From contig NZ_JMCB01000007.1 in assembly GCF_000737315.1 (NCBI RefSeq), positions 248,001 to 312,000 on the forward strand: a DNA stretch of 64,000 nucleotides. Reading direction: 5' to 3'. The translations under genes were made by a program, and so were the position numbers. Numbering within the stretch: the first letter of the stretch is position 1; each line of letters begins with the position of its first letter. Shown in pieces: positions 10,259-27,295 of this stretch. The notes under the pieces are model-generated. The model made no database searches. It was not told where the DNA came from and was given only the letters and a program-made list of their open reading frames with translations. Origin of the DNA: Hyalangium minutum (GTDB taxonomy: Bacteria; Myxococcota; Myxococcia; Myxococcales; Myxococcaceae).

Positions 10259-10264
10259 AAAAAA

Positions 10265-10349
10265 GCGGAGCGAGGTGGAGTCGAACCACAGGCCCGTTGG
10301 ACCCTCCTGGGTTCCAGCCAGGTTGCCGGCCGCCCGGCAATCACGCTCC
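10265..10349 (-). tRNA. tRNA-Ser(GGA)
   Basis: CCTGG-CTGGAAC-CCAGG, long variable arm, GTTCGACTC. Confidence 0.85.
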
Positions 10350-10366
10350 AAAACGGCACTGCACAT

Positions 10367-10451
10367 GCGGAAGACAGGGGACTCGAACCCCAAGCGCCGA
10401 GCACTCGCACCGCTTTCGAAACGGGCCACCGGCCTCCGGTGTTGGTCTTCC
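10367..10451 (-). tRNA. tRNA-Ser(CGA)
   Basis: CCGT-TTCGAAA-GCGG, long variable arm, GTTCGAGTC. Confidence 0.85.
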
Positions 10452-10607
10452 AGAAAAGGTGCTGGCAGCTGCGGACCCGCCTGCCAGCGCGCGGGGAGGC
10501 TCTACAGGTGGGGGCCGCCTCTGGCGCACCCCCGCTCCACCTTGTGCTCCGTTCCGGGGCGGAGCGGTGGCGGGGACCACCTCTGGTGACCCCCCATTTC
10601 CCGGGCC

Positions 10608-11150: not shown

Positions 11151-11171
11151 GACACGGGGCCTTTCGGGAAA

Positions 11172-11246
11172 TGTCCGCGGCGAGGTTCGAACTCGCACGT
11201 GAGCTGGGTTTGAGCCAGCCGCCTCTCCCATTTGGGCCACGCGGAC
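11172..11246 (-). tRNA. tRNA-Leu(CAA), short variable arm
   Basis: GCTGG-CTCAAAC-CCAGC; 5-nt variable region; A73. Confidence 0.8.
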
Positions 11247-11273
11247 GGTTGTTGGGAGCTTCTGAGAAGGAAG

Positions 11274-11349
11274 TACCGCGGGCGGGATTCGAACCCGCAA
11301 CCTCTGCATTCTGAGTGCAGCGCCTCTACCAAGGTTGGGCTACCGCGGC
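11274..11349 (-). tRNA. tRNA-Leu(CAG), short variable arm
   Basis: CTGCA-CTCAGAA-TGCAG; 5-nt variable region; GTTCGAATC. Confidence 0.85.
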
Positions 11350-11363
11350 ATGAAAGGGTGAAG

Positions 11364-11437
11364 TGCCGGAAGAGGGAGTCGAACCCTCACTCGCCAGACT
11401 CTCGAGCTGGTGCCTCTACCTATTGGGCTACTCCGGC
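11364..11437 (-). tRNA. tRNA-Leu(GAG), atypical loop
   Basis: CCAGC-TCGAGAG-TCTGG, C33, short variable region. Confidence 0.65.
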
Positions 11438-11444
11438 ATTTGAG

Positions 11445-11517
11445 TGCACGCCCTGGGGATCGAACCCAGCGAAATCGGTGTGTGGGACCGACGCCGTCTC
11501 CAGCTGGCTCGGCGTGC
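11445..11517 (-). tRNA. tRNA-Val(CAC), atypical loop
   Basis: TCGGT-CCCACAC-ACCGA, C33. Confidence 0.65.
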
Positions 11518-11526
11518 ATGAGAAGT

Positions 11527-11596
11527 TGCGGAGCAGGGAGTCGAACCCTGCAGCCCTGGCGTATGAGACCCGGTGGGGCGTCCGGCCCCTCTCCGC
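11527..11596 (-). tRNA. tRNA-Met(CAT), degenerate
   Basis: Loop CT-CAT-AC, imperfect anticodon stem and short D arm, T loop GTTCGACTC. Confidence 0.55.
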
Positions 11597-11619
11597 ATCA
11601 AAATCAACGTGCTGCTGAG

Positions 11620-11693
11620 TGCCCCTGGCAGGAATTGAACCTGCGGCCTCACGGTTCGGAGCCGTGCACTCTCATCCACTGAGCTACAGGGGC
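11620..11693 (-). tRNA. tRNA-Arg(CCG)
   Basis: CACGG-CTCCGAA-CCGTG; TAGCTCAGTGGATGAGAG D arm. Confidence 0.85.
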
Positions 11694-11703
11694 AAAACTG
11701 AAG

Positions 11704-11777
11704 CGGTCCCGGCAGGACTCGAACCTGCGACCCCACGGCTCGCAACCGTGTGCTCTCATCCACTGAGCTACGGAACC
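11704..11777 (-). tRNA. tRNA-Arg(GCG)
   Basis: CACGG-TTGCGAG-CCGTG; D arm same as neighbouring Arg(CCG). Confidence 0.8.
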
Positions 11778-11792
11778 AAAAAGACAAGGAAG

Positions 11793-11863
11793 TGGACCCG
11801 CCGGGATTCGAACCCGGGTCGCTCGGGTGCAAACCGAGCATTCTCCCGCTGAACTACGGGCCC
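11793..11863 (-). tRNA. tRNA-Ala(TGC)
   Basis: CTCGG-TTTGCAC-CCGAG; G3-U70 present (GGGCCCG/CGGGTCC). Confidence 0.85.
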
Positions 11864-11879
11864 AAAATTCACTGCTGAG

Positions 11880-11951
11880 TGGAGCCGCCGGGGATTGAAC
11901 CCGGGACCTCTCGGATGCGAACCGAGCGCTCTCCCGCTGAGCTACGACCCC
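11880..11951 (-). tRNA. tRNA-Ala(CGC)
   Basis: CTCGG-TTCGCAT-CCGAG; G3-U70 present. Confidence 0.85.
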
Positions 11952-11955
11952 ATGA

Positions 11956-12027
11956 AGCTGCTGGCGGGACTCGAACCCGCATTGTCCTGAGTGGCGCTCA
12001 GGTGCCTCACCTCTCGGCCACGGCAGC
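11956..12027 (-). tRNA. tRNA-Gly(GCC), atypical loop
   Basis: CCTGA-GCGCCAC-TCAGG, U73, G32/C33. Confidence 0.7.
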
Positions 12028-12050
12028 AAAACCTACGTCGGTACTTCGAG

Positions 12051-12123
12051 AGCCCTCGGCCGGAATCGAACCGGCGACACCCTGTTTACGAAACAGGTGC
12101 TCTGCCTACTGAGCTACAAGGGC
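12051..12123 (-). tRNA. tRNA-Thr(CGT)
   Basis: CCTGT-TTCGTAA-ACAGG. Confidence 0.85.
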
Positions 12124-12126
12124 AAA

Positions 12127-12196
12127 TGGCAGGCCGCCAAGGAGTTGAACCCTGCTGCTCGGATTTGGAGCCCAAGCTGCTCCCGGAGCGCGACCC
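12127..12196 (-). tRNA. tRNA-Trp(CCA), short D arm, encoded 3' CCA
   Basis: Loop CT-CCA-AA, G73 followed by CCA. Confidence 0.65.
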
Positions 12197-12216
12197 ATCA
12201 ACCAGTGAAGAAGAAG

Positions 12217-12289
12217 TGCCGTCTCCTGGAATTGAACCAGGTCCTCCTGCTTTTCAGACAGGCGCGCGAACCATCTACGCCAAGGCGGC
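12217..12289 (-). tRNA. tRNA-Phe(GAA)
   Basis: CCTGT-CTGAAAA-GCAGG. Confidence 0.8.
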
Positions 12290-12306
12290 AAAACATCGAC
12301 TGCGAG

Positions 12307-12377
12307 CGCTCCTGCAGGGAATCGAACCCTGTTCACGTGGTAGACGGCCACGCCGCGATCCAATCGCGTCCAAGAGC
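12307..12377 (-). tRNA. tRNA-Asp(GTC), atypical loop
   Basis: CGTGG-CCGTCTA-CCACG, G73, C33 and U37. Confidence 0.65.
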
Positions 12378-12400
12378 AAGGGAAGGGTGCTTCACTTCAG

Positions 12401-12472
12401 TCGGGGCACCTGGACTCGAACCAGGATTGCTCGCGTATCAGACGAGAGTCTTTGCCTTTGGACCATACCCCG
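12401..12472 (-). tRNA. tRNA-Ile(GAT)
   Basis: CTCGT-CTGATAC-GCGAG. Confidence 0.75.
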
Positions 12473-12493
12473 AAGTGCTACAAGTGTTACAAG

Positions 12494-12567
12494 TCTGGGT
12501 GGCAGGACTTGAACCTGCGACCTCACGGATCCGAACCGTGCGCTCTACCAAGCTGAGCCACACCCAG
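12494..12567 (-). tRNA. tRNA-Pro(CGG)
   Basis: C1-G72, CACGG-TTCGGAT-CCGTG. Confidence 0.85.
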
Positions 12568-12576
12568 ATAAACAAG

Positions 12577-12652
12577 TCGGGATGACTGGATTCGAACCAG
12601 CGGCCTCACGCACCCCAAGCGTGCGCTCTCATCCAAGCTGAGCTACATCCCG
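12577..12652 (-). tRNA. tRNA-Pro(GGG)
   Basis: C1-G72, CACGC-TTGGGGT-GCGTG. Confidence 0.85.
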
Positions 12653-12669
12653 ATGAAACATGCTGCGAG

Positions 12670-12742
12670 CGCCTCGTGCGGGAGTCGAACCCGCCTTTCC
12701 ACATTGAGAGTGTGGCGGCCTAAACCGATAGCCGAACGAGGC
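12670..12742 (-). tRNA. tRNA-Glu(CTC)
   Basis: CCACA-CTCTCAA-TGTGG, G73. Confidence 0.8.
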
Positions 12743-12755
12743 AAAAAGACTGGAG

Positions 12756-12826
12756 AGGCTTGTGCGGGAGTTGAACCCGCCACCAGACGGTTTTGCAGAC
12801 CGCCGCCGCCCCGGGCGGAACAAGCC
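12756..12826 (-). tRNA. tRNA-Cys(GCA)
   Basis: GCGGT-CTGCAAA-ACCGT, U73. Confidence 0.75.
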
Positions 12827-12832
12827 AAGATG

Positions 12833-12905
12833 CTCGGAGGGAGGGACTCGAACCCTCAACCCCGCGGTTAACAGCCGCGTGCTCTGCCAGTTGAGCTACC
12901 TCCGA
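12833..12905 (-). tRNA. tRNA-Asn(GTT)
   Basis: U1-A72, CGCGG-CTGTTAA-CCGCG, G73. Confidence 0.9.
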
Positions 12906-12917
12906 ATACTGCTTCAG

Positions 12918-12989
12918 CGCCGAGAGAAGGATTCGAACCTTCGTTTACGGGTTCAGAGCCCGCCGCCCTGCCAATTGGACCATCTCGGC
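12918..12989 (-). tRNA. tRNA-Gln(CTG)
   Basis: GCGGG-CTCTGAA-CCCGT, G73. Confidence 0.8.
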
Positions 12990-13004
12990 ATACCGACAAG
13001 GTGA

Positions 13005-13075
13005 AGCGGGTGACGGGACTCGAACCCGTGTCACTGGCTTGGGACGCCAGAGTCTTGCCACTAGACGACACCCGC
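13005..13075 (-). tRNA. tRNA-Gly(CCC)
   Basis: CTGGC-GTCCCAA-GCCAG, U73, GCGGGTG acceptor. Confidence 0.8.
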
Positions 13076-13087
13076 GTGTGCTGCGAG

Positions 13088-13158
13088 TACCCCCGGAGGG
13101 AATCGAACCCTCACCGTCCGCTTAAGAGGCGGATGCTCGACCAATGAGCTACGGAGGC
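13088..13158 (-). tRNA. tRNA-Lys(CTT)
   Basis: TCCGC-CTCTTAA-GCGGA. Confidence 0.85.
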
Positions 13159-13204
13159 GTTTGACCGCCCCCGTGCAAGCGGGCGGACGAACTTCACCAC
13201 TGCG

Positions 13205-13223
13205 ATTCAGTTGTCAGAGAACA
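13205..13223 (-). promoter_or_regulatory. rrn-type boxA antitermination-like element
   Basis: Minus strand TGTTCTCTGACAACTGAAT resembles rRNA-operon boxA context (GTTCTTTGAAAACTGAA), in the first array spacer. Confidence 0.5.
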
Positions 13224-13256
13224 AGGGACTGCCTTGGAACTGCTCACACTGCTGAG

Positions 13257-13342
13257 TGGGGATGCTGAGAGTTGAACTCAGTGGGCCGTCGAGCGGCTCC
13301 GGAGTTACAAGCCGGTGCGTCTCCGTAACGCGCTACATCCCC
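13257..13342 (-). tRNA. tRNA-Tyr(GTA), first gene of the array
   Basis: GGGGATG/CATCCCC acceptor, loop TT-GTA-AC with a mismatch closing the stem, long variable arm, A73. Confidence 0.7.
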
Positions 13343-15926: not shown

Positions 15927-16658
15927 ATGGACCTGAAGCTTCTGCATGACTGGAACGTCACGCCCCAAGAGGCTGTGGCGCTCCAGAACTCCCTGCGTGA
16001 GCGGCTCGTGCTTCGAGCTCCCTCGGGGTTGAGAGTGTCCCGAGTCGCCGGTGCGGATATCTCCACCGAGCGTGGCAATGACACCGGGTACGGGGCCTTT
16101 GTGGTCCTCGACGCGGAGTCACTGGCCCCTGTCTCTCAGCAGGGTGCTGAGGCCCCGCTTGGCTTTCCCTACGTGCCAGGTCTGTTGTCGTTCCGGGAGC
16201 TACCCGTGCTCGCGGCCGCTTGGATGCGCTTGGAGTCCGCGCCCGATTTGCTCGTCTTCGATGGGCAAGGCACAGCTCACCCTCGCCGCATGGGAATTGC
16301 CTGCCATGGCGGTCTGCTCTTTGGCGTGCCGTCCATTGGGTGTGCCAAGTCGCTGCTGGTGGGCTCGCACGGTCCCCTAGGTGAAGAACGCGGCGCAACG
16401 GCGGAGATCCGGCACCGAGGTGAGGTGATCGGCATGGCGGTGCGGACGCGCCGGGGCGTCAGTCCCGTCTATGTCTCTCCTGGCCACTTGATGGACCTGC
16501 CCACCGCCGTGGAGTGGGTCCTTCGCTTGAGCCCTCGCTACCGCGAGCCGGAGACGACACGGCACGCGCATCGGCTCGTCAATGTGCTGCGCCGCCAGGC
16601 CCATGGAGGTTTGCAGGGTGACGTGTGTGGCCAGTGGGGAAGGGCATGGTCACCTTGA
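15927..16658 (+). CDS. nfi: Endonuclease V (deoxyinosine 3' endonuclease)
   Basis: VAGADIS, FPYVPGLLSFRE, DGQGTAHPRRMGIA.H.G, IGCAKS.L.G, V.VSPGH, YREPETTRHAH. Confidence 0.95.
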   Translation: MDLKLLHDWNVTPQEAVALQNSLRERLVLRAPSGLRVSRVAGADISTERGNDTGYGAFVVLDAESLAPVSQQGAEAPLGFPYVPGLLSFRELPVLAAAWMRLESAPDLLVFDGQGTAHPRRMGIACHGGLLFGVPSIGCAKSLLVGSHGPLGEERGATAEIRHRGEVIGMAVRTRRGVSPVYVSPGHLMDLPTAVEWVLRLSPRYREPETTRHAHRLVNVLRRQAHGGLQGDVCGQWGRAWSP

Positions 16659-16767
16659 AGCCGCGACGGAGGTTGTCCATGGCTGAGAATCGTGAACCCA
16701 CCCAGGCCCCCGAGGTGAATGCACGGCAGGGGACCACTCAGAGAGACGTACCCCTAGCCCGCAAATG

Positions 16768-16811
16768 AGAGGCGCCACCTCCCCGGAGTGCTCCGGAGAG
16801 GTGGCGCCTCT
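16768..16811. terminator. Strong hairpin between convergent nfi and vWA genes
   Basis: AGAGGCGCCACCTC...GAGGTGGCGCCTCT with inner CCGGAG-TG-CTCCGG. Confidence 0.7.
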
Positions 16812-16817
16812 ATTGGC

Positions 16818-18581
16818 TCAGGCCGCCTTCAGCAGCGGCGTGCGCATCACGCGCTCCACCCAGCCAGACTGGCTCACGCCAGCCGCCTTCGGCGCGTCCA
16901 GCAGCGCCTTCAGCACCCGCGGCACCTGGTAGGGGTCCGCGAACTGGTCCACCGACACCTCGCTGAACGGCACCTGCAGCTGGCCCGCGCACGTCCGCAC
17001 GGTGTTACCCCGTGCGCTCGCCACGCTCACCATCAGCGCCAGCGCCGCCACCGTGTAGCCGCACTCGCGGAAGGCCCGCGCGAACTGGTCGCCGGCCTCG
17101 CCCGCCTCGTCGCCCACCACGATGACCACGAGCTTCGCCTCCGCCGGCACCTTCACGCCGTCCCGGTGCAGAGCGTGCACCGCGGCCGCGTGCGTCGTAC
17201 CGCCAGACGCCTTGATGCCCTGCAGCATGTGCTGCACTGCCATGCGGCTGGACACCTTCGGCTTGAGCACCGTGCCCACCGTGTCGAACGACGCGATGTG
17301 CAGCTTCTCCAGCGGGAAGCCCGCGAGGATGCGCGTGAGCGCCTCCTTGGACTGCTCGATGGCCCCCTCCATGGAGCCGGACTTGTCGATGAGGAACATC
17401 ACCCGCACGTCCGTCTCCGCCGTCGCCTCCGCCACTGCCTGCCGGGCTGCGTTGTCGCTCGCCTCCTCCAGCTTCTCTCGCAGCTCCTTGCTCCGGACGT
17501 TCTTCGCGATGTGGAGCGCCCGCTGGTCCGTTGCCGTCTGCACGGCCTTCTCCCAGCGCGCCCGGATGGTGGGCTCCGACAGCAAGCCCAGCTCCTCCAG
17601 CGTTGGCGTCATCATCCGCATGTCCCGGTCCGACAGCGACGGCAGCAGCGCCACCATGATGGCCGGCGTGAGCCCCACGTCCTTCGGCAGGCGGCCCACC
17701 ACCTCCTTGAAGGAGAGCTTCTGCGACTCGATGGTCTCGCAGATCTCCGCCTCGGAGAGCCCGTCGAAGCGCTCGCGCTTGACCAGCCGCAGGCCCTCGA
17801 GGCCCACCGCCCGGTGGCCCCCGCTGGACTGCTTCTGCTTCCAGCCGAGCACCTCGAAGAACGCCTGCGTCTCCGGCTTGTAGCCGGCCTTGCGGGCGAG
17901 CTTCTTCAGCGTCTCCTTGAAGCCGGCCTTCACCAGACCCTCGAGCATCGGCAGGTTCTTCTCCCGCGCCTGGAGCCACTTCTGCGCCACGCGCTTCCAG
18001 CGGCCCAGCGGCGGCCGCTTGGAGCCGGGGTCACCGAACCCCGCCTCGCGGTTGAGCCGCGCGATCTCCGGCGTCTCGAGCAGCTCGGCCACTCGCAGCA
18101 CCGCCTTGGGCGTGAGCATGCGCGTGGACTTGCGCTCGTAGTGCAGGATCATCGCCTCGCCGATGGCCCGGTGGTCGTCGTCGAAGAAGGCGACCGTGCC
18201 GTCGTCCTCACGAACCGGCTGACCCGCGTGGCCCTGCACCAGCATCAGCGCGCAGGTCGCCACCTTCAGGTCACGCCAGTCCGTCTGCGTCAGCGCGTAG
18301 GACGCGAAGTGCGCCATCAGGTCCGTGTTGAGCTTGTAGATGTCCAGGATCTGCCGGTACAGCTTCACCGCCGCCGGCACGAAGAGGCCCGGGCTCACCC
18401 GCGTCGCCTTGGCCGGGATCGCCGCGTTGCCGCGGGGCGCCGGCTGCCAGACGCCGTTGAGGTCGAGGCCCGGCCGGTTGTGCCACAGGTGGGCGGAGCC
18501 GTTGAGCACGAGCTCGAGCAGCCGCTCGGCGGGCCCGCGCTGTGCCTCCGGAATCATCGGGGTGTTCTGCTTCGTCGTCAT
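16818..18581 (-). CDS. Divergent Ro60/TROVE-like protein with C-terminal vWA domain
   Basis: vWA MIDAS MFLIDKSGSM, GGT, VVGDE; helical N-terminus with GRWKRVAQKWL and LKKLARKAGYKP resembling TROVE motifs; flanked by Y-RNA-like genes; SD GGAGGG. Confidence 0.65.
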   Translation of the reverse strand: MTTKQNTPMIPEAQRGPAERLLELVLNGSAHLWHNRPGLDLNGVWQPAPRGNAAIPAKATRVSPGLFVPAAVKLYRQILDIYKLNTDLMAHFASYALTQTDWRDLKVATCALMLVQGHAGQPVREDDGTVAFFDDDHRAIGEAMILHYERKSTRMLTPKAVLRVAELLETPEIARLNREAGFGDPGSKRPPLGRWKRVAQKWLQAREKNLPMLEGLVKAGFKETLKKLARKAGYKPETQAFFEVLGWKQKQSSGGHRAVGLEGLRLVKRERFDGLSEAEICETIESQKLSFKEVVGRLPKDVGLTPAIMVALLPSLSDRDMRMMTPTLEELGLLSEPTIRARWEKAVQTATDQRALHIAKNVRSKELREKLEEASDNAARQAVAEATAETDVRVMFLIDKSGSMEGAIEQSKEALTRILAGFPLEKLHIASFDTVGTVLKPKVSSRMAVQHMLQGIKASGGTTHAAAVHALHRDGVKVPAEAKLVVIVVGDEAGEAGDQFARAFRECGYTVAALALMVSVASARGNTVRTCAGQLQVPFSEVSVDQFADPYQVPRVLKALLDAPKAAGVSQSGWVERVMRTPLLKAA

Positions 18582-18678
18582 GGTCCCCTCCGGGAACGTG
18601 TTGCGGGTGAGTCGGAACGAAGCGGGCACCGGAACCAGCCGGTACCCGCCTCGGGTGGAAGTAGGTGAAAGGGAAAAG

Positions 18679-18821
18679 GTGCGCCCGAGTGGCGAAGCCA
18701 CGACGACCCTGTGGAAGGGCAGTGCTCTACCAGGCTGAGCTACGGGGCCATGGAGCGGCCCCGGCGGGAGTTGAACCCGCGACCCCTGCAGTGCTTGTAG
18801 GGCCTCACCGGCCGGGCGCTC
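18679..18821 (-). ncRNA. YrlA-like Y RNA (circularly permuted tRNA mimic)
   Basis: Order T arm (GCGGG-TTCAACT-CCCGC), acceptor hairpin (CGGGGCC-GCTCCAT-GGCCCCG), D arm (TAGCTCAGCCTGGTAGAGC); closed by GCAG/CTGC and terminal GCGCCCG/CGGGCGC stem. Confidence 0.8.
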
Positions 18822-18840
18822 AATCAGATGAGATGCAGGC

Positions 18841-19548
18841 TCACGAGAAGACGTTCACGTCTCCGTGCACCGGGAACAGCGCGACGTCTTTGCCGCCCCG
18901 GTAGGACTGCCTCGCGGGTACCGAGACGAGCTCCCACGAGGGGAGAACCACCGCGGTGAGCGAGCGTCCGTAGACACAGCCCGTGTCGATGCCGACCGCG
19001 TGCTCTGTCACCAGCGGCTTGTCGAACACCGTGTGCCCGAAGATGACGCGCTCGGGGCCCTTCCAGTGGTGCGTCCAGAATCGATGCGTCGCTGGCGCCT
19101 TCGAGGGCCAGTAGCTCTTCTTCTCTGGAGGCTGGATGCACTGGGCGTGGAGCAGGTGGTACGGATCCTGCGACTCGATGGGCTTGTGGGGCATCACTCC
19201 CGCGTGCACCACGACGGCGTTGTACTCAGGCAGCCGGATGTAGAGCGGGAGCTTGGCGAAGTAGTCCAGGTGCTCGGGTTCGAGCGCCCGCCGCGTCTCC
19301 AGGTGGTCCGGCGAGAGCCGGTCGTCCGAGCGGCGGCGCTGTTGAAGGTGCGACTCCTCGTGGTTGCCCTGGATGGCCTCGTACTTCATGGCCAGCTCCA
19401 CGCACTCGCGGCGCTTGGGGCCTCGGTCCACGAGGTCTCCCGCGAAGATGATGCGGTCGCTGGAAGTCGCGCCCACCTTGGCGAGCAGCTCGAGGGCCTC
19501 GTCGTAACAGCCGTGCAGGTCGCCGATGACGATGGTTCGGGGAGACAT
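18841..19548 (-). CDS. Calcineurin-like metallophosphoesterase (ApaH/PP1/Pnkp-phosphatase-like)
   Basis: IGDLHG, GDLVDRG, GNHE, VHAG, FGHT, IDTGCVYG. Confidence 0.9.
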   Translation of the reverse strand: MSPRTIVIGDLHGCYDEALELLAKVGATSSDRIIFAGDLVDRGPKRRECVELAMKYEAIQGNHEESHLQQRRRSDDRLSPDHLETRRALEPEHLDYFAKLPLYIRLPEYNAVVVHAGVMPHKPIESQDPYHLLHAQCIQPPEKKSYWPSKAPATHRFWTHHWKGPERVIFGHTVFDKPLVTEHAVGIDTGCVYGRSLTAVVLPSWELVSVPARQSYRGGKDVALFPVHGDVNVFS

Positions 19549-19568
19549 GGGACAACACCTCAAGAATG

Positions 19569-19704
19569 GAGCGCCCGAGTGAGGAAGCCGTAAGTTGCGC
19601 TGAATTCACGGTTCAGTGTCGGGACCCCCCGACGGCATCGCCCTGATGGGAGAAGGGTGGAGTCGAACCACCGGAGCTTGTAAGGCCTCTTCGGCCAGGC
19701 ACTC
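19569..19704 (-). ncRNA. Second Y-RNA-like gene
   Basis: Terminal stem GAGTGCCTG/CGGGCGCTC, GCCGAAG motif, T arm GGTGG-TTCGACT-CCACC; 5' and 3' ends paralogous to 18679-18821. Confidence 0.7.
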
Positions 19705-19723
19705 TAAAAGAGTTGCCGCCAAG

Positions 19724-19748
19724 GACGCCGCCTCCCCTGGTTCCTGAC
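19724..19748 (-). promoter_or_regulatory. Candidate ECF-sigma promoter 3 (Y RNA / Ro operon)
   Basis: GTCAGGAA-N13-CGTC about 20 nt upstream of the Y-RNA stem. Confidence 0.7.
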
Positions 19749-19784
19749 GGCGGATTTTCCGGCTCCAGCCTTCCCCGGCCTTCT

Positions 19785-19810
19785 GTCAGGAACCTGGAAA
19801 AGCCCCCGTC
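19785..19810 (+). promoter_or_regulatory. Candidate ECF-sigma promoter 4 (autoregulatory, sigma gene)
   Basis: GTCAGGAA-N14-CGTC on the + strand, divergent from promoter 3. Confidence 0.7.
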
Positions 19811-19974
19811 TTGCTCTGCGACGCCCCCCTACCTGTCCGTTCACCGGCGGTGGGGGTCCCCGTCATCGGAGGATGCCTGCGGATGCCATCGTGGTACCTT
19901 GCCGAGCCGTGGATGCCCCGCCCACCCGCCAGGTGGGGAGGCACTGAACTCCTCGGCGCTACCAGGTTCCTTCG

Positions 19975-20640
19975 GTGTACGACCAGCTCTCGGATGACGA
20001 ATTGTTCGCGGAAGTCTCCCGACGCCGCGCGGCCGGCGAGTCCTTCAATGGACCGCTCGGCGCGCTTGTCGAGCGGTGGGGCCGTCCCGCCCGTTATGTC
20101 ATCGGCAAGATCCAGGCCAGCTATGGCCGGGGCTCTCCCGCGGATGGGGATGAGCTCTTCCAGGATGCCGTGGGGAAGTTCATCTCCCGCGGCCTCGACC
20201 AGTTTCGCGGCATCTCCGAGCACATGCCCGGCAAGGCCGCTTCCCCCAAGACGTTCTTCCTGCGAATCGTCAAGCACGTCGCCATCGACTTCTACCGGCG
20301 GCAGCGCGAGGAACTGGCCCCAGCGCCCAGCGACCCGGACGACACCATGGAGGAGTCTCCTTCCGAGATGGCGCAGGCCGTGGAGAAGGCCAAGCGCACC
20401 GAGGAGCGCTCGGACGCTCAAGAGCTCTACTGGGCAGCGTTTGCCCGCCTCCAACAAGAGCACCCCAAGGAGGCTGGCGCGTGGGAGCTGTACCACCACC
20501 AAGATGTGGAGGACCACGAAGAATGCGCCCGTCTGCTGAACATCACCGTGGTCAACTCCTACAAGCGCGTCAGCCGCGCGCAGGCCTACCTCAAGCTGTA
20601 TCTGCTCGAGTTGAAGCAGACAGCCGAGGGAGGGGACTGA
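19975..20640 (+). CDS. ECF-type RNA polymerase sigma factor
   Basis: DGDELFQDA.. / FFLRIVKHVAIDFYRR (region 2), EECARLLNITVVNSYKRVSRA (region 4 HTH). Confidence 0.85.
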   Translation: MYDQLSDDELFAEVSRRRAAGESFNGPLGALVERWGRPARYVIGKIQASYGRGSPADGDELFQDAVGKFISRGLDQFRGISEHMPGKAASPKTFFLRIVKHVAIDFYRRQREELAPAPSDPDDTMEESPSEMAQAVEKAKRTEERSDAQELYWAAFARLQQEHPKEAGAWELYHHQDVEDHEECARLLNITVVNSYKRVSRAQAYLKLYLLELKQTAEGGD

Positions 20641-20680
20641 GTCCCCGCTTTTCGTTCCATCTCTTCTCTCGAGGTTCGCG

Positions 20681-21865
20681 ATGAGTGACGCTCTCTCCCG
20701 TTATCAGGCCCGGCATCAGCAGCTCTCCAGTGGTTCCTCCTCCGTGGGAGGTACCCTCGAAGCCGCAGGAGATCTGCTTCGTCGTAGCTCTCGCGTCGGA
20801 GTGCAAGCCGTGGAGCCAGCGCTGCGCGCGGTGACTCGACCTCAGATCGAGACATGGCTGCAGAGTCAGAAGCCCGCCGAGCTTCGGACCCAGTTGCTCA
20901 AAGCCGCCGAGGAAGCTGTCGAGGTCGCGCTGGGAGAAGGTGGCGACGAGGCGGAGATGTGGCGAACTTCGGCGATGGATGGGTTGTCCGCGCGAGATCG
21001 CGCCGCCTCCGCCGCCCGCGCACTGGGGCAGTGGGAGGCCCTCCACGGAGCCCTGACGGGGCCCGCAGCGCAACGGCGGGACGATTTTCTCCAGGCCCTC
21101 GGGAATCTCGATAACGCGCTCCGCCCGAGGGCCCGCTGGTTCATCCCCCTGAACCCGCAACGCAGACAAGAGCGCGACCTGCTCGACTCTTCCGAGCAAG
21201 CGCAGGCCTGGTGGTTCTCTGCCCGGGCCGACTGTGATGACTTGGTGGCTACCTGGACGCAGCAGCCCCAGTCCCTCTCTCCTCACCTTCAGAGCTGTGC
21301 CGACTGCCGCGACGATCTCGCGGACACCGCCATCGTTGATCAGCCTCCTGCCCGTCACGTGAGCGCCGATGAGCTGTGGCGCCTCGACGTGGGACTGCTG
21401 TCCACCGACGAGCGCGCTCGCATCGAGTCGCATACCGCTCAGTGCTCCGACTGTGCCCAGGCTGTGCTGGCCCTCGAGGAGGGTGACGCCGCCATTGATG
21501 AGGCTCTGGAGATGGAGGCAGAGGGCTCCACGGGGCCGGGTCTTGCCGCGCGCACCTCGCGGGAGGCTGTTCCTCGCCGCCCCGGTGCCCGTCTCCCCGA
21601 GCAGCGCGAGGTGCTGGAGGAGCGCCGCGATTTTCGCGTGCTCCTCGTGCGTGAGCGCCAGCGCGTGAGGCTCCTGGTGCAGCCGCTCTCTGGCCGCACC
21701 GTCACTGCCGCCGTGTTCACTGCTCCCGGCAAGCCCTCGATCAAGCCGACTCAGGGGCCCGAGGGGATTTCCTTCGAGCTCGGCGCCGACGGTGGTGGCA
21801 CGCGCTCCGCTCACCTCACCGTGATGGCCGGCGGAGAGACCCTGGAGCGCGACTTCTCCTACTGA
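20681..21865 (+). CDS. Soluble anti-sigma-like protein with two HxxxCxxC zinc motifs
   Basis: HLQSCADC and HTAQCSDC (second in zf-HC2 context LSTDERARIESH..QC..C); no obvious TM helix; directly after sigma. Confidence 0.65.
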   Translation: MSDALSRYQARHQQLSSGSSSVGGTLEAAGDLLRRSSRVGVQAVEPALRAVTRPQIETWLQSQKPAELRTQLLKAAEEAVEVALGEGGDEAEMWRTSAMDGLSARDRAASAARALGQWEALHGALTGPAAQRRDDFLQALGNLDNALRPRARWFIPLNPQRRQERDLLDSSEQAQAWWFSARADCDDLVATWTQQPQSLSPHLQSCADCRDDLADTAIVDQPPARHVSADELWRLDVGLLSTDERARIESHTAQCSDCAQAVLALEEGDAAIDEALEMEAEGSTGPGLAARTSREAVPRRPGARLPEQREVLEERRDFRVLLVRERQRVRLLVQPLSGRTVTAAVFTAPGKPSIKPTQGPEGISFELGADGGGTRSAHLTVMAGGETLERDFSY

Positions 21866-24970: not shown

Positions 24971-27295
24971 GTGAATCCGCACGAAGCCGCCCTGCTCGAA
25001 GACCTGAACCCGCCTCAGAAGGAGGCCGTCCTCCATGGGGACGGTCCGCTGCTCGTCCTGTCGGGGGCCGGCAGTGGCAAGACGCGCGTCATTACTCGCC
25101 GCGTCGCCCACCTGGTGACGGTCCGCCGCGTGTTCCCCTGGCGCATCCTCGCCGTCACCTTCACCAACAAGGCCGCCCGCGAGATGCGCGAGCGTCTGAC
25201 ACAGCTGCTCGGCGCTCAGGCCCATGAGCTCGTGGTCAGCACGTTCCACTCGTCCGCCGCCATGATTCTCCGCCGCGAGGCCGAGGCCGTGGGCCTGACT
25301 CGCAGCTTCGTCATCTATGACGATGGGGATCAGCTCGGGCTCGTGAAGCGCGCCATGCGCGATGCCCGCGTGGAGCCGCTGCTGCAGCCGCGCGAGATTC
25401 TCCACCGCATCGATCAGGAGAAGAACGCCGCCCGCCTGCCCGAGGACATGCAGGTGGACATCGACGACATACGCGGCATGGTGGTGAAGAAGACGTATCA
25501 GGCCTATCAGCGCCTGCTGCGCGCCGCCAACGCCGTGGACTTTGGCGATCTGCTCCTGCTGCTGGTGACCCTGTTCCGCAAGCGGCCGGATGTGCTGGCC
25601 AAGTACCGGCAGCGCTTCTCTCATGTGCTCGTGGACGAGTTCCAAGACACCAACCCTGTCCAGTATGAGCTGCTGCGCCTGCTAGCGCCTCCGCCGGGCG
25701 CCAACCTCGTGGTGGTGGGCGATGATGACCAGTCCATCTACCGGTGGCGCGGCGCCAGCGTGGACAACATCCTCGGCTTCCCTCAGCAGTACCCGGGGGC
25801 CCGGGTCGTCAAGCTGGAGCAGAACTACCGCTCGGACAAGAACATCCTCGAGGCCGCGCACGCCGTCATCTCTCACAACCGGCGGCGCATGCCCAAGAAG
25901 CTCTGGAGCGAGCGGCCCCCGGGCGCGAACCTCGATCTGCTCATCAACCGCGATGAGCGCGCCGAGGCCCAGGAGGTCGCCCGGCGCGTTCTGGCGCTCC
26001 AGCGCGAGGGCTTCATCAAGTACTCCAGCATGGCCGTCTTCTACAGGGCCAACGCGCAGAGCCGCGTGCTCGAAGAGGCCATGCGCCTGGCCCGTGTGCC
26101 GTACACCCTGGTCAGTGGCCGCAGCTTCTATGACCGCGCCGAGGTTCGCGATGCCGCCGCGTATCTGCGCCTCATGGTCAACCCGCGCTCGGATGCGGAC
26201 CTGCTGCGCGTCATCAACACCCCGGCCCGTGGCATCGGCGACACCACCGTGGAGCGGCTCTCCGACTACGCCGATGCTCAGGGCATCAGCCTGTATGAGG
26301 CCATCGAGCGGCCGGAGAAGATTCCCGCGCTCAATGCGGCGGCCGCGCGGCGGCTGGGTGGGTTTCATGTGCTGGTGTCTTCCCTGAACGCGTTTGCCCA
26401 GAAGGCCCAGGATGCCGCGGGCGCCGTGGACGAGATGTTGAAGGAGACCAAGCTCGTCGAGTCCCTCATGGCCGAGGGCAGCGATGAGTCCATCACTCGC
26501 GCGGAGAACCTTCGCGAGTTCTTGGGCGCGGCGCAGGAGTTCGACCTGAACCGTGCGGCTGCTGCCGTGGCTGCCGCAGCGGCTCAGCCCGCAGAGGGCG
26601 CCGAGCCTCCGCCTCCCGAACTGGATGCGGCTCCGCTTACCGCGGATGTGCCTCCGCTTCAGGCGTTCCTGGAGCAGATCAGTCTGGTCGGTGAGGCGGA
26701 TGCGGAGGTGGGGGAGGGCCGGGTGGCGCTCATGACGCTGCATGCCGCCAAGGGCCTGGAGTTCGATGCTGTGTTCCTCACCGGCATGGAGGACGGGGTC
26801 TTCCCGCACTCGCGCTCGCTGGCCGTCGAGGATCCCGAGGACAGTGAGGAGATGGCCGAGGAGCGGCGCCTCTGCTACGTGGGCTTTACCCGTGCTCGAA
26901 AGCGGCTGTTCATCAGTTTCGCGCAGTGCCGCTCTCTCTTCGGTGAGCTTCGCTACAACCCGCCCTCTCGCTTCCTGCGGGACGTGCCGCAAGGACTCTT
27001 CGGCATCGAGCAGGAGGTTCAGGAAGCCCCGCGTCCCATGCCCTCGGCTGTGGCTCCGCGCCGCCGCTCGTATGACGAGGACGATGGGCCGCGCGTGGAT
27101 CGCTCCTACTCGCAGGCCGCCGATGGCGAGGGGATGGGCGGGGACGTGCGGGGCATGCGCGTGCGCCACGAGCAGTTCGGTGTGGGCCGCATCATCTCCG
27201 CCGACGGCTCGGGCCCCAATGCGAAGGTGACGGTCGAGTTCGGCGGTGGCGTGGGCCTCAAGCGTGTCATCGCCCGGTTCCTCATGCCGGGCTGA
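24971..27295 (+). CDS. uvrD: ATP-dependent DNA helicase UvrD/PcrA
   Basis: GAGSGKT, TFTNKAA, VDEFQDTN, VVGDDDQSIYRWRGA, LEQNYRS, TLHAAKGLEF, EERRLCYVGFTRA, C-terminal Tudor-like VRHEQFG.G. Confidence 0.95.
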   Translation: MNPHEAALLEDLNPPQKEAVLHGDGPLLVLSGAGSGKTRVITRRVAHLVTVRRVFPWRILAVTFTNKAAREMRERLTQLLGAQAHELVVSTFHSSAAMILRREAEAVGLTRSFVIYDDGDQLGLVKRAMRDARVEPLLQPREILHRIDQEKNAARLPEDMQVDIDDIRGMVVKKTYQAYQRLLRAANAVDFGDLLLLLVTLFRKRPDVLAKYRQRFSHVLVDEFQDTNPVQYELLRLLAPPPGANLVVVGDDDQSIYRWRGASVDNILGFPQQYPGARVVKLEQNYRSDKNILEAAHAVISHNRRRMPKKLWSERPPGANLDLLINRDERAEAQEVARRVLALQREGFIKYSSMAVFYRANAQSRVLEEAMRLARVPYTLVSGRSFYDRAEVRDAAAYLRLMVNPRSDADLLRVINTPARGIGDTTVERLSDYADAQGISLYEAIERPEKIPALNAAAARRLGGFHVLVSSLNAFAQKAQDAAGAVDEMLKETKLVESLMAEGSDESITRAENLREFLGAAQEFDLNRAAAAVAAAAAQPAEGAEPPPPELDAAPLTADVPPLQAFLEQISLVGEADAEVGEGRVALMTLHAAKGLEFDAVFLTGMEDGVFPHSRSLAVEDPEDSEEMAEERRLCYVGFTRARKRLFISFAQCRSLFGELRYNPPSRFLRDVPQGLFGIEQEVQEAPRPMPSAVAPRRRSYDEDDGPRVDRSYSQAADGEGMGGDVRGMRVRHEQFGVGRIISADGSGPNAKVTVEFGGGVGLKRVIARFLMPG

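What the first reader, a model, noticed from the sequence alone, without database searches (positions are those of the whole stretch)
18679..18821. YrlA-type Y RNA: complete circularly permuted tRNA elbow
Seen: T arm, then an acceptor stem closed by a loop, then D arm, with the anticodon stem replaced by a long terminal helix followed by a U-rich tail. The permuted order excludes a normal tRNA. Established: this is the architecture of bacterial YrlA Y RNAs encoded beside Ro genes.
Basis: partly seen in the sequence, partly recalled or inferred. Interest (0 to 1): 0.8.

Follow-up and report, generated by a model that had tools for sequence, protein, structure and literature searches.

The report
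Y-RNA-like tRNA mimic beside cryptic Ro
The sequence really is a small structured RNA built like a rearranged tRNA, of the kind that partners with the Ro protein. Here the partner gene is a previously unrecognised, very divergent Ro-like protein, and the RNA belongs to an undescribed sister family shared by myxobacteria and giant phages.

Summary
On the minus strand, 18819..18681 holds a 139-nt RNA. In order it has an 8-bp and a 9-bp terminal helix, a T arm, a 7-bp acceptor stem closed by a loop, U8-A9 and a D arm. A pyrimidine/U-rich tail follows.

It matches Rfam YrlA (47.9 bits, E 1.8e-9) but falls below the family threshold of 69 bits. It is conserved upstream of the same gene across Myxococcaceae, with abundant compensatory changes, including the tRNA 15:48 Levitt pair.

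- **Neighbouring gene.** It is not a recognisable Ro gene: there is no TROVE hit in Pfam, NCBIfam or PDB sequence searches. Its AlphaFold model nevertheless matches only Ro60/TROVE structures over its full length, and it keeps a complete MIDAS motif.
- **RNA family.** Members normally keep a closed 5-bp/7-nt anticodon-like arm, so the terminal helix leaves the cloverleaf at the variable-loop position. In the window copy this arm has decayed to a 4-bp hairpin.
- **Second RNA.** A paralogous RNA that no Rfam family detects lies at 19704..19569(-). The layout is RNA-B, phosphoesterase, RNA-A, Ro-like gene.

The same protein and RNA pair occurs in jumbo-phage contigs beside tRNA arrays. Verdict: a new variant of the Ro/Y-RNA system. 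Binding and function are inferred, not shown.

The parts
18672..18822 (-). RNA-A, the reported element. It is a Y-RNA-like tRNA mimic: a terminal helix P1+P2, the CUACAAGC motif, a T arm, a 7-bp closed acceptor, UA, a D arm, a short hairpin and a U/C-rich tail. From P1 to P1 it spans 18819..18681 (139 nt).
   Evidence: Sequence coordinates checked. Rfam YrlA 47.9 bits. Own models: R1 131.6 bits and R2 95.3 bits (this copy itself was not among R2's training sequences, though its type-A orthologues were). Covariation.
18764..18780 (-). T arm of RNA-A: GCGGG-UUCAACU-CCCGC.
   Evidence: Compensatory changes in relatives (GCAGG/CCUGC, GUUGG/CCAAC).
18743..18763 (-). Acceptor-stem analogue: 7 bp closed by the loop GCUCCAU.
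   Evidence: Five of seven pairs show compensatory changes. A 7-bp stem is the RNase P determinant noted for M. smegmatis YrlA (PMC4201824).
18724..18742 (-). U8-A9 plus the D arm: GCUC-AGCCUGGUA-GAGC, with A14, G15, G18, G19 and A21.
   Evidence: G15 pairs with C48 (18781). This Levitt pair covaries, C:G in 7 sequences and U:A in 6.
18707..18719 (-). Short hairpin CCCU-UCCAC-AGGG, at the position of the anticodon arm. It is a decayed version of the 5-bp/7-nt arm found in relatives.
18681..18699 (-). 3' strands of P2 (GGCUUCGCC) and P1 (UCGGGCGC), with the conserved loop AC between them. They pair with 18819-18801.
   Evidence: P1 and P2 covary once the phage members are included.
19562..19705 (-). 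RNA-B, a second paralogous RNA. It has the same P1/P2 frame, with GCCGAAG (a GNCGAAN0-1G match) and UUACAAGC. It then carries a T arm (19672-19656), a weak closed acceptor (19655-19636), a 6-bp hairpin with a GGGU loop in place of the D arm (19633-19618), and a 5-bp/7-nt anticodon-like arm CUGAA-CCGUGAA-UUCAG (19616-19600).
   Evidence: R1 67.7 bits. R2 103.4 bits, but this copy was in the R2 training set. No Rfam family hits it. Coordinates checked. Orthologues are present in nearly all Myxococcaceae loci examined.
18841..19548 (-). Calcineurin-like metallophosphoesterase gene (235 aa), lying between the two RNAs.
   Evidence: Pfam Metallophos 2.9e-15. NCBIfam ApaH, PrpE and the phosphatase domain of Pnkp. 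PHROG NinI-like phosphatase 3e-37.
16818..18581 (-). Ro60-like protein gene (587 aa): an N-terminal helical-repeat domain of about 385 aa and a C-terminal vWA domain with a complete MIDAS motif.
   Evidence: Only VWA families hit by sequence. AF2 model: pLDDT 85.9, pTM 0.77. The top 8 Foldseek PDB hits are all Ro60/TROVE over about 560 aligned columns. BFVD hits include phage Ro-like and TROVE proteins. D399, S401, S403, T462 and D491 are invariant in 51 homologues.
18619..18652 (-). Conserved GC-rich hairpin between RNA-A and the Ro-like start codon. It may be a weak terminator, an attenuator or a processing element.
   Evidence: Sequence. Compensatory changes are seen among Hyalangium relatives. 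The terminator scan did not call it because there is no U tract.
19706..19770 (-). Conserved block upstream of RNA-B (CCGTCAGGAAC ... GCGTCC ...), a candidate promoter of the RNA-B/phosphoesterase/RNA-A/Ro-like unit.
   Evidence: Alignment A8 of 12 genera or species. No sigma-70 consensus is present. The function is inferred.

Best explanation
RNA-A is a non-coding Y-RNA-class tRNA mimic. It most likely works as the RNA subunit of a ribonucleoprotein with the protein encoded 90 nt downstream, a highly divergent Ro60-like ring-plus-vWA protein.

**Proposed mechanism**
- *Transcription (inferred).* A single minus-strand unit starts upstream of 19705 and carries RNA-B, a lambda/Pnkp-type phosphoesterase, RNA-A and the Ro-like gene. 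The two RNAs are excised from this transcript, as M. smegmatis YrlA and YrlB are cut from one precursor.
- *Protein docking (inferred by analogy with Ro60/Y RNA).* The conserved terminal module is P1, an asymmetric internal loop, P2 and the single-stranded CYACAMGC. The CGAA-type motif sits at the P1/P2 junction in RNA-B. This module is the docking site for the Ro-like protein.
- *tRNA-like elbow (fold shown by covariation; partners unknown).* The T loop and D loop, U8, the 15:48 Levitt pair and the 7-bp acceptor fold into a tRNA L-shape. This shape recruits tRNA-recognising factors. RNase P cleavage at the 5' side of G18749 is predicted because the acceptor stem has 7 bp.
- *Likely process (inferred from context).* The context points to surveillance or repair of damaged tRNA-like RNA. 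That context is a 3'-end-healing-type phosphoesterase in the operon, a 26-tRNA array 3.5 kb away, and homologous protein/RNA pairs placed at the ends of tRNA arrays in jumbo phages.
For: **The RNA is real and structured**
- YrlA is the only significant Rfam match.
- Orthologues lie upstream of the same gene in Hyalangium, Myxococcus, Pyxidicoccus and Corallococcus and in a Polyangiales MAG.
- Core structure: 98.7% of cells paired, 12 compensatory pairs, 0 of 500 shuffles reach the observed value, and slid controls stay at or below 48%.
- On a MAFFT alignment of 19 diverse members, including phage copies, 90% of cells are paired and 30 of 37 pairs are compensatory, across all six helices.
- The Levitt pair covaries.

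**The partner protein is Ro60-like**
- The AF2 model has pTM 0.77.
- Foldseek PDB ranks 1-8 are all Ro60/TROVE, with E 1e-8 to 2e-7, about 560 aligned columns and target-normalised TM 0.43-0.52. Apart from two further chains of the phage phiLo Ro60, every other hit listed covers only the VWA-sized part.
- BFVD returns a Gordonia phage 'Ro-like RNA binding protein' and a phage TROVE protein.
- The MIDAS motif is invariant.

**Synteny holds across very distant hosts**
- R2 hits of at least 50 bits lie within 3 kb of the Ro-like gene in about 17 phage or metagenomic loci whose proteins are only 32-43% identical.

**Y-RNA hallmarks**
- A 5'/3' terminal stem, a large junction, GCCGAAG in RNA-B matching GNCGAAN0-1G (PMC4201824) and the CGAA motif (PMC12135203), and two RNAs per locus as with YrlA and YrlB.
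Against: - No experimental evidence of expression or of binding exists.
- RNA-A scores below the Rfam YrlA threshold and lacks the CGAA motif itself (it has CGGU).
- The protein shows no sequence-level TROVE similarity. The best result is E = 0.23 to phage phiLo Ro60. Foldseek TM-scores are only moderate (0.39-0.52), so a Ro-like ring is plausible but not proven.
- RNA-A is missing in some close relatives (L005-L007 and Corallococcus), and its tRNA-like module is deleted in L002. It may therefore be the dispensable partner, with RNA-B the principal one.
- A hairpin separates RNA-A from the Ro-like ORF, so co-transcription is not certain.
- The MFE z-score is weak.
Confidence: 0.68

Rival explanations
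1. The RNA works without the VWA/Ro-like protein, as an anticodon-arm-bearing tRNA decoy or sensor. Family members would present a genuine-looking anticodon loop to anticodon nucleases or other tRNA-targeting toxins. The operon phosphoesterase would then heal the cleaved ends.
For: - 46 of 54 family members have a 7-nt loop, with Y32 in 43/46, U33 in 32/46 and R37 in 44/46, carrying 22 different 'anticodons'.
- Among Corallococcus species the RNA body is almost constant, and apart from small alignment-sensitive patches at the D-arm analogue and the 3' linker the variation falls on this loop.
- A phosphoesterase of the Pnkp/lambda type is in the operon.
Against: - The window's RNA-A has lost the canonical loop. 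Only RNA-B has one, and there with C33.
- The tight synteny with the Ro-like gene from myxobacteria to jumbo phages argues for a protein partner.
- No nuclease or toxin gene was identified in the locus.
- Many of the counted sequences are closely related, so the loop statistics are inflated.
Confidence: 0.12
2. It is a cis-acting element of the operon transcript, such as a processing site, stabiliser or attenuator for the phosphoesterase and Ro-like mRNAs. It would not be a stable trans-acting RNA.
For: - RNA-A starts about 20 nt after the phosphoesterase stop codon and lies in the 5' region of the Ro-like gene.
- A conserved hairpin follows it.
- The GC-rich terminal helix followed by a U-rich tail resembles a terminator.
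Against: - In phage loci the same RNA lies downstream of the Ro-like gene or kilobases away, sometimes in tandem copies.
- RNA-B occupies a different position in the operon.
- Preservation of tRNA tertiary contacts such as the Levitt pair is not needed for a terminator or processing hairpin.
Confidence: 0.1
3. It is a circularly permuted tRNA gene. RNase P and 3' processing would open the acceptor loop, giving a two-piece, aminoacylatable tRNA whose long variable arm is the terminal helix.
For: - Phage members carry N-CCA directly after the acceptor 3' strand (8 of about 18 phage members) and canonical anticodon loops.
- The same P1/P2 frame flanks genuine tRNA-Met and tRNA-Ile.
- M. smegmatis YrlA is cleaved by RNase P and receives CCA in vivo (PMC4201824).
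Against: - The window's RNA-A has no 7-nt anticodon loop, and CCA does not follow its discriminator position.
- Anticodons change freely on a constant body in close relatives, which is incompatible with a fixed amino-acid identity.
- No precedent exists in bacteria.
Confidence: 0.05
4. It is a decaying relic of a tandem tRNA junction from the nearby tRNA array, with no function.
For: - A 26-tRNA array lies 3.5 kb away.
- The models also give weak hits on adjacent tRNA pairs.
- The anticodon arm is decayed, and the tRNA-like module is deleted in L002.
Against: - It is conserved, with compensatory changes, across genera and in phages.
- No donor tRNA in the array is closely similar.
- The conserved non-tRNA frame (P1, P2, CYACAMGC) cannot be explained by tRNA junction decay.
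Confidence: 0.03

Closest known systems
YrlA (Rfam RF02553; Salmonella Typhimurium and M. smegmatis Y RNA-like A; Chen et al. 2014, PMC4201824; structure 6CU1, bioRxiv 10.1101/312249)
   Same: - The T arm, loop-closed acceptor and D arm come in permuted order.
- The elbow nucleotides, U8-A9 and the covarying Levitt pair are conserved.
- The 5' and 3' ends pair in a long stem.
- It lies on the same strand as, and next to, a Ro-type gene.
- A second, less tRNA-like RNA is in the same locus, as with YrlB.
- It has a 7-bp acceptor, like the RNase P-cleaved M. smegmatis YrlA.
   Different: - It scores 47.9 bits against a threshold of 69.
- The family keeps a closed anticodon-like arm, so the terminal helix joins at the variable-loop position. 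In YrlA that helix is the continuation of the anticodon stem, and YrlA 'lacks the anticodon loop'.
- It has a different conserved single-stranded motif (CYACAMGC).
- RNA-A lacks GNCGAA.
- The partner protein has no detectable TROVE sequence signature.
Ro60 / Rsr (TROVE + vWA; PDB 1YVP, 2NVO; phage phiLo Ro60 9KOP/9L5Y, PMC12135203)
   Same: - The predicted architecture matches: an N-terminal helical-repeat domain followed by a vWA domain with MIDAS.
- Ro60/TROVE entries are the only full-length structural matches.
- The gene is adjacent to Y-like RNAs.
- It occurs in phages.
   Different: - Identity is 12-14%, with no Pfam TROVE hit.
- TM-scores are about 0.4-0.5.
- An N-terminal beta-hairpin region (residues about 32-62) is predicted.
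- The family is concentrated in jumbo phages and Myxococcaceae.
Deinococcus radiodurans Yrn1
   Same: It is a Y RNA with a T arm and a potential closed 'anticodon arm' with a 5-bp stem (PMC4201824).
   Different: Yrn1 has no full D arm, a 6-nt loop and a different order of elements. It has no similarity to the frame described here.
Permuted tRNA genes (Cyanidioschyzon merolae) and two-piece (permuted) tmRNA
   Same: The 3' half (T arm and acceptor 3' strand) is encoded upstream of the 5' half (acceptor 5' strand, D arm and anticodon arm). Some phage members encode CCA in the junction. This comparison with the C. merolae genes rests on recalled knowledge, not on a test made here.
   Different: The break lies in the variable region and is bridged by a conserved long helix. 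Anticodons vary on a constant body. There is no evidence of circularisation or aminoacylation.

Membership tests
YrlA (Rfam RF02553) | Covariance-model score at or above the curated gathering threshold (69 bits) | tested here: not met
   47.9 bits for the window and no hit in gathering mode. Orthologues score 45.9 and 42.6 bits, and Corallococcus and Polyangiales copies do not hit. RNA-B does not hit.
YrlA (Chen et al. 2014) | tRNA-like module: T arm, stem-loop in place of the acceptor stem, and D arm, with conserved elbow nucleotides and a Levitt pair | tested here: met
   sequence; helix covariation; 15:48 covaries, C:G in 7 and U:A in 6.
YrlA (Chen et al. 2014) | GNCGAAN0-1G / CGAA motif near the 5' end (proposed Ro60 contact) | tested here: not met
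   RNA-A has GCCGGUG at the homologous place, and close orthologues have GCCGACG or GCCGGCG. RNA-B and the type-B orthologues have GCCGAAG, which does match.
YrlA (structure 6CU1) | Anticodon-stem analogue formed by the 5' and 3' strands and continuing into the Ro-binding module, with no anticodon loop | tested here: inconclusive
   In the window, a 3-4-bp GCAG/CUGC pairing is possible and appears to covary within Hyalangium (CAG/CUG versus GAG/CUC, by eye). However, a hairpin also sits there. In 46 of 54 family members a closed 5-bp/7-nt arm follows the D arm, which is not the YrlA topology.
YrlA (Chen et al. 2014) | Encoded within about 4 kb of, and on the same strand as, a TROVE-domain Ro60 orthologue | tested here: inconclusive
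   It lies on the same strand, 90 nt upstream of a gene with no TROVE sequence match but with a Ro60-like predicted structure. Whether a canonical TROVE gene exists elsewhere in the genome was not tested.
Y RNA (general) | Physically bound by Ro60 in vivo | not testable with these tools
   This needs co-immunoprecipitation or EMSA.
YrlA | Carries tRNA modifications (Psi55 by TruB, D by DusA), or is cleaved by RNase P when the acceptor stem is 7 bp | not testable with these tools
   The sequence prerequisites are present: UUC in the T loop, U in the D loop, and a 7-bp acceptor stem.
Ro60 / TROVE protein family (Pfam PF05731) | Significant match to the TROVE profile, or to Ro60 sequences | tested here: not met
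   There is no TROVE hit for the window protein or for 10 diverse homologues at E up to 1. PDB phmmer and hmmsearch return only VWA matches, with TROVE at E = 0.23.
Ro60 / TROVE protein family | Helical-repeat ring followed by a vWA domain with a MIDAS motif | tested here: met
   This rests on prediction only. AF2 gives pLDDT 85.9 and pTM 0.77. Foldseek full-length matches are exclusively Ro60/TROVE. DxSxS...T...D is invariant. Ring closure itself was not inspected.
Canonical tRNA | Acceptor stem formed by the 5' and 3' ends, with D, anticodon and T arms in that order | tested here: not met
   ARAGORN and Rfam tRNA do not call it. The order is permuted.

The most novel reading that the evidence does not exclude
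The RNA and its relatives are not merely Y RNAs. They would form a distinct class of circularly permuted, complete-cloverleaf tRNA derivatives.

- A Ro-like protein holds the conserved terminal helix, which sits at the variable-arm position.
- RNase P and 3' trimming open the acceptor loop. CCA is already encoded there in many jumbo-phage copies.
- A rapidly diversifying, canonical anticodon loop acts as bait or sensor for anticodon-targeting nucleases, or even decodes.

The same Ro-binding frame also wraps genuine phage tRNAs. This would make the Ro-like protein a dedicated chaperone or repair platform for phage and myxobacterial tRNA arrays.
Probability: 0.15. Interest if true: 0.9.

Novelty: new variant of a known kind. 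Interest (0 to 1): 0.66.

Why it matters
Bacterial Y RNAs have so far been sought only next to proteins that carry a recognisable TROVE domain (PMC4201824). This locus shows that a Ro60-like protein invisible to sequence profiles exists, together with its own tRNA-mimic RNAs. It is common in Myxococcaceae and in jumbo phages, where it sits beside tRNA arrays.

This widens the known distribution of Ro/Y-RNA systems. It also links them physically to tRNA gene arrays and to an end-healing-type phosphoesterase.

Family members retain an anticodon-like arm with a hypervariable 'anticodon'. That offers a direct experimental handle on a long-open question: what the tRNA-like domain of bacterial Y RNAs is for. 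Members also look like intermediates of the proposed origin of YrlA from tandem tRNA transcripts.

Tried and rejected
- **Sequence route to Ro.** Pfam, NCBIfam, PHROGs, PADLOC, and PDB phmmer and profile searches found only VWA. TROVE never reached significance.
- **First structure model.** The first AF2 model, from a shallow alignment, was poor (pTM 0.45). It was replaced by one from a 51-sequence alignment.
- **Megablast against phage genomes.** No match.
- **Viral collection pattern scan.** A scan for the phage-type frame (AAACGA-N7-CNACACGCA) returned chance hits only. Three of 115 passed a pairing filter, and none was convincing.
- **The search for related loci.** The full diverse alignment had no sufficiently conserved stretch. 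A narrower alignment worked.
- **Donor tRNA in the neighbouring array.** Only generic tRNA similarity was found.
- **Promoter and terminator scan.** The sigma-70 promoter and intrinsic-terminator scan of 16700-20000 found nothing relevant.
- **Weak model hits.** R1 and R2 hits below about 45 bits fall on adjacent tRNA pairs (for example L210 714-844 and L180) and were discarded as dimeric-tRNA artefacts.
- **Papers not held.** Burroughs and Aravind 2016 and the 2020 Annual Review on bacterial Ro60 were not in the library. The supplementary tables of Chen et al. 2014 were not held either. I therefore could not check whether any myxobacterium was in their list.
- **Literature search.** A search combining Myxococcus with Ro60, Rsr, Y RNA or YrlA listed no paper (top 12 of 343) that mentions Myxococcus.
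Full report
**1. What is there**

The window comes from Hyalangium minutum DSM 14724 (contig JMCB01000007.1). The adjacent protein is found exactly there, and its closest relatives are Hyalangium, Archangium and Myxococcus proteins.

The reported element lies on the minus strand. Read 5' to 3', with coordinates verified, it consists of:
- P1: 18819-18812 GCGCCCGG, pairing with 18688-18681 UCGGGCGC.
- A CC/AC internal loop.
- P2: 18809-18801 GGUGAGGCC, pairing with 18699-18691 GGCUUCGCC.
- A single-stranded CUACAAGC (18800-18793).
- A 12-nt linker ending in the variable-loop-like GGGUC.
- A T arm, GCGGG-UUCAACU-CCCGC (18780-18764).
- A 7-bp acceptor analogue closed by GCUCCAU (18763-18743).
- U8-A9.
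- A D arm, GCUC-AGCCUGGUA-GAGC (18740-18724).
- A26.
- CUG, then a small hairpin CCCU-UCCAC-AGGG (18719-18707).
- UCGUCGU, then the 3' strands of P2 and P1.
- The tail ACCUUUUCCCUUUC.

Only the strand and the small hairpin were missing.

**2. Is it more than chance?**

ARAGORN and the Rfam tRNA model find 27 and 19 tRNAs in the window, respectively, but do not call this element.

In a sensitive Rfam scan of 901 nt, the only meaningful hit is YrlA (RF02553), at 47.9 bits and E 1.8e-9. It covers the T arm, acceptor and D arm. The score is below the curated threshold of 69 bits, and the outer stems are poorly aligned.

MFE folding recovers the structure, but the energy is not exceptional for this G+C content (z = -1.5).

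The decisive evidence is comparative. I fetched 31 loci that encode relatives of the downstream protein. The RNA is present at the same place in Hyalangium, Myxococcus and Pyxidicoccus species, Corallococcus terminator and a Polyangiales MAG.
- On a MAFFT alignment of 14 orthologues, the five core helices are 98.7% paired. Twelve pairs show compensatory changes, no shuffle out of 500 reaches the observed values, and slid controls drop to 34-48%.
- The tertiary Levitt pair (position 15 in the D loop with position 48 before the T stem) switches between G:C (7 sequences) and A:U (6 sequences), with one exception. This matches what was described for YrlA (PMC4201824).

**3. The neighbourhood**

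The minus-strand unit reads as follows:
- A conserved upstream block (about 19706-19770; alignment A8).
- RNA-B (19704..19569).
- A 235-aa calcineurin-like phosphoesterase (19548..18841).
- RNA-A, starting about 20 nt after the phosphoesterase stop codon.
- A conserved hairpin (18652..18619).
- A 587-aa protein (18581..16818), with a good ribosome-binding site.

The phosphoesterase resembles ApaH, PrpE, the phosphatase domain of bacterial Pnkp, and lambda NinI-type phosphatases.

An ECF-type sigma and anti-sigma pair is transcribed divergently upstream. Downstream lie a convergent endonuclease V gene and an esterase gene. After them comes a 26-tRNA array (10170-13342, minus strand) with an HNH gene inside it.

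**4. The second RNA**

A covariance model built from the 14 orthologues (R1) found a second copy in the window at 19705..19562(-), scoring 67.7 bits.

RNA-B has the same P1/loop/P2 frame and the same UUACAAGC motif. It also has:
- A T arm.
- A weak acceptor hairpin.
- A 6-bp hairpin with a GGGU loop in place of the D arm.
- A 5-bp/7-nt anticodon-like arm, CUGAA-CCGUGAA-UUCAG.

At the P1/P2 junction it carries GCCGAAG. This matches the GNCGAAN0-1G motif proposed as the Rsr contact in YrlA and YrlB (PMC4201824), and the 'CGAA motif' used to find the phage phiLo Y-like RNAs (PMC12135203). RNA-A has GCCGGUG at that place.

No Rfam family detects RNA-B. Type-B RNAs are present in nearly all Myxococcaceae loci examined. 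RNA-A, by contrast, is absent from L005-L007 and from most Corallococcus species (only C. terminator, L011, carries it), and its tRNA-like module is cleanly deleted in one Hyalangium MAG.

**5. Is the neighbour a Ro protein?**

Not by sequence.
- Pfam and NCBIfam see only a vWA domain at residues 394-516.
- Ten diverse homologues also lack any TROVE hit at E up to 1.
- phmmer and two profile searches against all PDB sequences return only vWA domains. The phage phiLo TROVE protein appears at E = 0.23.
- Public annotations read 'VWA domain-containing protein'.

By predicted structure, the answer is yes.
- A 51-sequence alignment (A3) gives an AlphaFold2 model with pLDDT 85.9 and pTM 0.77.
- Its eight best Foldseek matches in the PDB are all Ro60/TROVE entries: Xenopus Ro60 1YVP, 1YVR and 2I91, the cryo-EM Ro60 entries 9NFA and 9NEP, and the phiLo TROVE protein 9KOP. 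They have E 1e-8 to 2e-7, about 560 aligned columns and 12-14% identity. TM is 0.39-0.44 normalised by the query and 0.43-0.52 normalised by the target.
- Apart from two further chains of the phiLo Ro60 (9L5Y), every other match listed covers only the VWA-sized part. Deinococcus Rsr (2NVO) was among the top hits of the first, poorer model.
- In the viral structure library, the top hits include 'Ro-like RNA binding protein' of Gordonia phage VanLee and a phage TROVE protein.
- The MIDAS residues (D399, S401, S403, T462, D491) are invariant across the family.

I conclude that this is a very divergent Ro60-like protein. The ring geometry itself remains a prediction.

**6. The wider family**

An exhaustive HMMER search found only 382 clusters at 50% identity. 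The distant members sit on phage-like contigs.
- A scan of IMG/VR returned 74 loci, most of them on contigs of 100-600 kb.
- About 42 of 60 loci scanned have tRNA genes within 3 kb, almost always upstream and on the same strand.
- Others sit next to tmRNA genes.
- The one GenBank phage hit, Rctr197k, has the gene directly after a 34-tRNA array.

R1 finds the same RNA architecture near these genes. So does R2, a second model built from a MAFFT alignment of myxobacterial type A, type B and phage members (A6).

On A6, which was not fitted to any structure, all six helices are supported. These are P1, P2, the T arm, the closed acceptor, the D arm and the anticodon-like arm. Overall, 90% of cells are paired, 30 of 37 pairs are compensatory, and 0 of 500 shuffles reach the observed value.

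Hits of at least 50 bits occur in about 17 phage or metagenomic loci within 3 kb of the gene. This is a lower bound. Weaker hits were discarded because they coincide with adjacent tRNA pairs.

**7. How the family differs from YrlA**

In S. Typhimurium YrlA, the 5' and 3' strands form the anticodon-stem analogue, which continues into the Ro-binding module. The RNA 'lacks the anticodon loop' (bioRxiv 10.1101/312249).

Here the general design is: frame, T arm, closed acceptor, D arm, and then a closed 5-bp stem with a 7-nt loop. The terminal helix therefore leaves the cloverleaf between the anticodon arm and the T arm, where the long variable arm of class II tRNAs sits.
- Of 54 members, 46 have a 7-nt loop. 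Among those, Y32 occurs in 43, U33 in 32 and R37 in 44. They carry 22 different 'anticodons'.
- Among ten Corallococcus type-B RNAs the body is almost invariant, and apart from small alignment-sensitive patches at the D-arm analogue and the 3' linker the variation falls on this loop.
- Eight of about 18 phage members encode N-CCA directly after the acceptor 3' strand, inside the closing loop.
- In two phage-like contigs, the same P1/P2/CYACAMGC frame encloses genuine tRNA-Met and tRNA-Ile genes.

These features fit the proposal that YrlA-type RNAs arose from tandem tRNA transcripts (discussed in 10.1101/312249). They make this family look like a less reduced relative.

The window's RNA-A is a derived member. 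Its anticodon arm has shrunk to CCCU-UCCAC-AGGG. A 3-4-bp GCAG/CUGC pairing that would mimic the YrlA topology is possible, and it appears to covary within Hyalangium (by eye). Five closely related sequences cannot settle this.

**8. Mechanism**

Shown:
- A conserved, structured, tRNA-shaped RNA with a conserved non-tRNA terminal module.
- Strict synteny with a Ro60-like gene across hosts as distant as myxobacteria and jumbo phages.
- A second paralogous RNA, and a phosphoesterase, in the same unit.

Inferred:
- The Ro-like protein binds the terminal module, by analogy with Ro60 and Y RNA.
- The RNAs are processed from an operon transcript, by analogy with M. smegmatis.
- RNase P opens the 7-bp acceptor of RNA-A, also by analogy with M. 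smegmatis, where this was shown.
- The RNP acts on damaged or misfolded tRNA-like RNAs.

I put 0.68 on 'Y-RNA-class partner of the adjacent Ro-like protein'. The rivals are listed separately: an independent anticodon-loop decoy or sensor, a cis-acting operon element, a permuted functional tRNA, and a junk tRNA junction.

**9. Novelty**

The kind of system (Ro60 plus a tRNA-mimicking Y RNA) is known. The following appear undescribed in the literature I could search:
- This protein clade, which is invisible to TROVE profiles.
- This RNA family, which falls below the Rfam threshold, has a different topology and retains an anticodon arm.
- Their concentration in Myxococcaceae and at jumbo-phage tRNA arrays.

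Chen et al. restricted their search to the flanks of annotated TROVE proteins (PMC4201824), so this locus would have been missed. Some key reviews were not available to me, so prior mention cannot be excluded.

My rating is a new variant of a known kind, with interest 0.66.

Noticed in passing
window 19562-19705 (-): A second, paralogous Y-like RNA (RNA-B) lies upstream of the phosphoesterase gene. It carries the GCCGAAG motif and a 5-bp/7-nt anticodon-like arm. No Rfam family detects it.
   Followed up: yes
window 10170-13342 (-): An array of 26 tRNA genes covers 19 amino acids (no His), with an HNH endonuclease ORF inside it at about 10608-11150. Among Myxococcaceae relatives the array is present only in the Hyalangium group.
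   Followed up: partly
window 7283-10096 (-): A 937-aa AAA+/ClpB-like protein has a peptide-chain-release-factor (PCRF) domain hit and PADLOC matches to DolB and PDC-M37B. An RNase J gene follows it.
   Followed up: partly
window 18619-18652 (-): A conserved GC-rich hairpin lies between RNA-A and the Ro-like start codon. It shows compensatory changes in Hyalangium relatives and has no U tract.
   Followed up: partly
window 19706-19770 (-) and 19975-21865 (+): A conserved block upstream of RNA-B (CCGTCAGGAAY-N11-12-GCGTCC) sits next to a divergently transcribed ECF sigma / zf-HC2 anti-sigma pair. It may be an ECF-dependent promoter, although the spacing is atypical.
   Followed up: partly
window 15927-16658 (+): An endonuclease V gene is convergent with the Ro-like gene. 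The enzyme cleaves at inosine.
   Followed up: no
window 26701-26782 (+): ARAGORN calls a solitary 82-nt tRNA-Met(CAT), but the Rfam tRNA model does not report it at the gathering threshold.
   Followed up: no
L002 1817-1885: In one Hyalangium MAG the T-acceptor-D module of RNA-A is cleanly deleted. The P1/P2 frame and the small hairpin remain.
   Followed up: partly
L036 5908-6046; L035 1297-1428: In phage-like contigs the same P1/P2/CYACAMGC frame encloses genuine tRNA-Met (with encoded CCA) and tRNA-Ile genes. In L036 three frame-bearing RNAs lie in tandem directly after the Ro-like gene.
   Followed up: partly
A7 alignment (54 family members; for example L013-L023 type-B RNAs): The anticodon-like loops follow tRNA rules (Y32, U33, R37) but are hypervariable. 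Corallococcus species share a near-identical RNA body yet carry UGG, CGU, GUU, CCA, UCG or CCG.
   Followed up: partly
L191, L192, L196, L165, L215, L036 (acceptor-closing loops): Many jumbo-phage members encode a discriminator base plus CCA immediately after the acceptor 3' strand, inside the loop that closes the acceptor stem.
   Followed up: partly
L035-L039 (downstream of the Ro-like gene): Phage-like contigs share a recurring gene set after the Ro-like gene: ORFs of about 316, 134 and 85 aa, then HNH, a ThiF/E1-like gene and sometimes Prok-JAB. tmRNA genes lie immediately upstream in L037 and L038 and downstream in L034.
   Followed up: no
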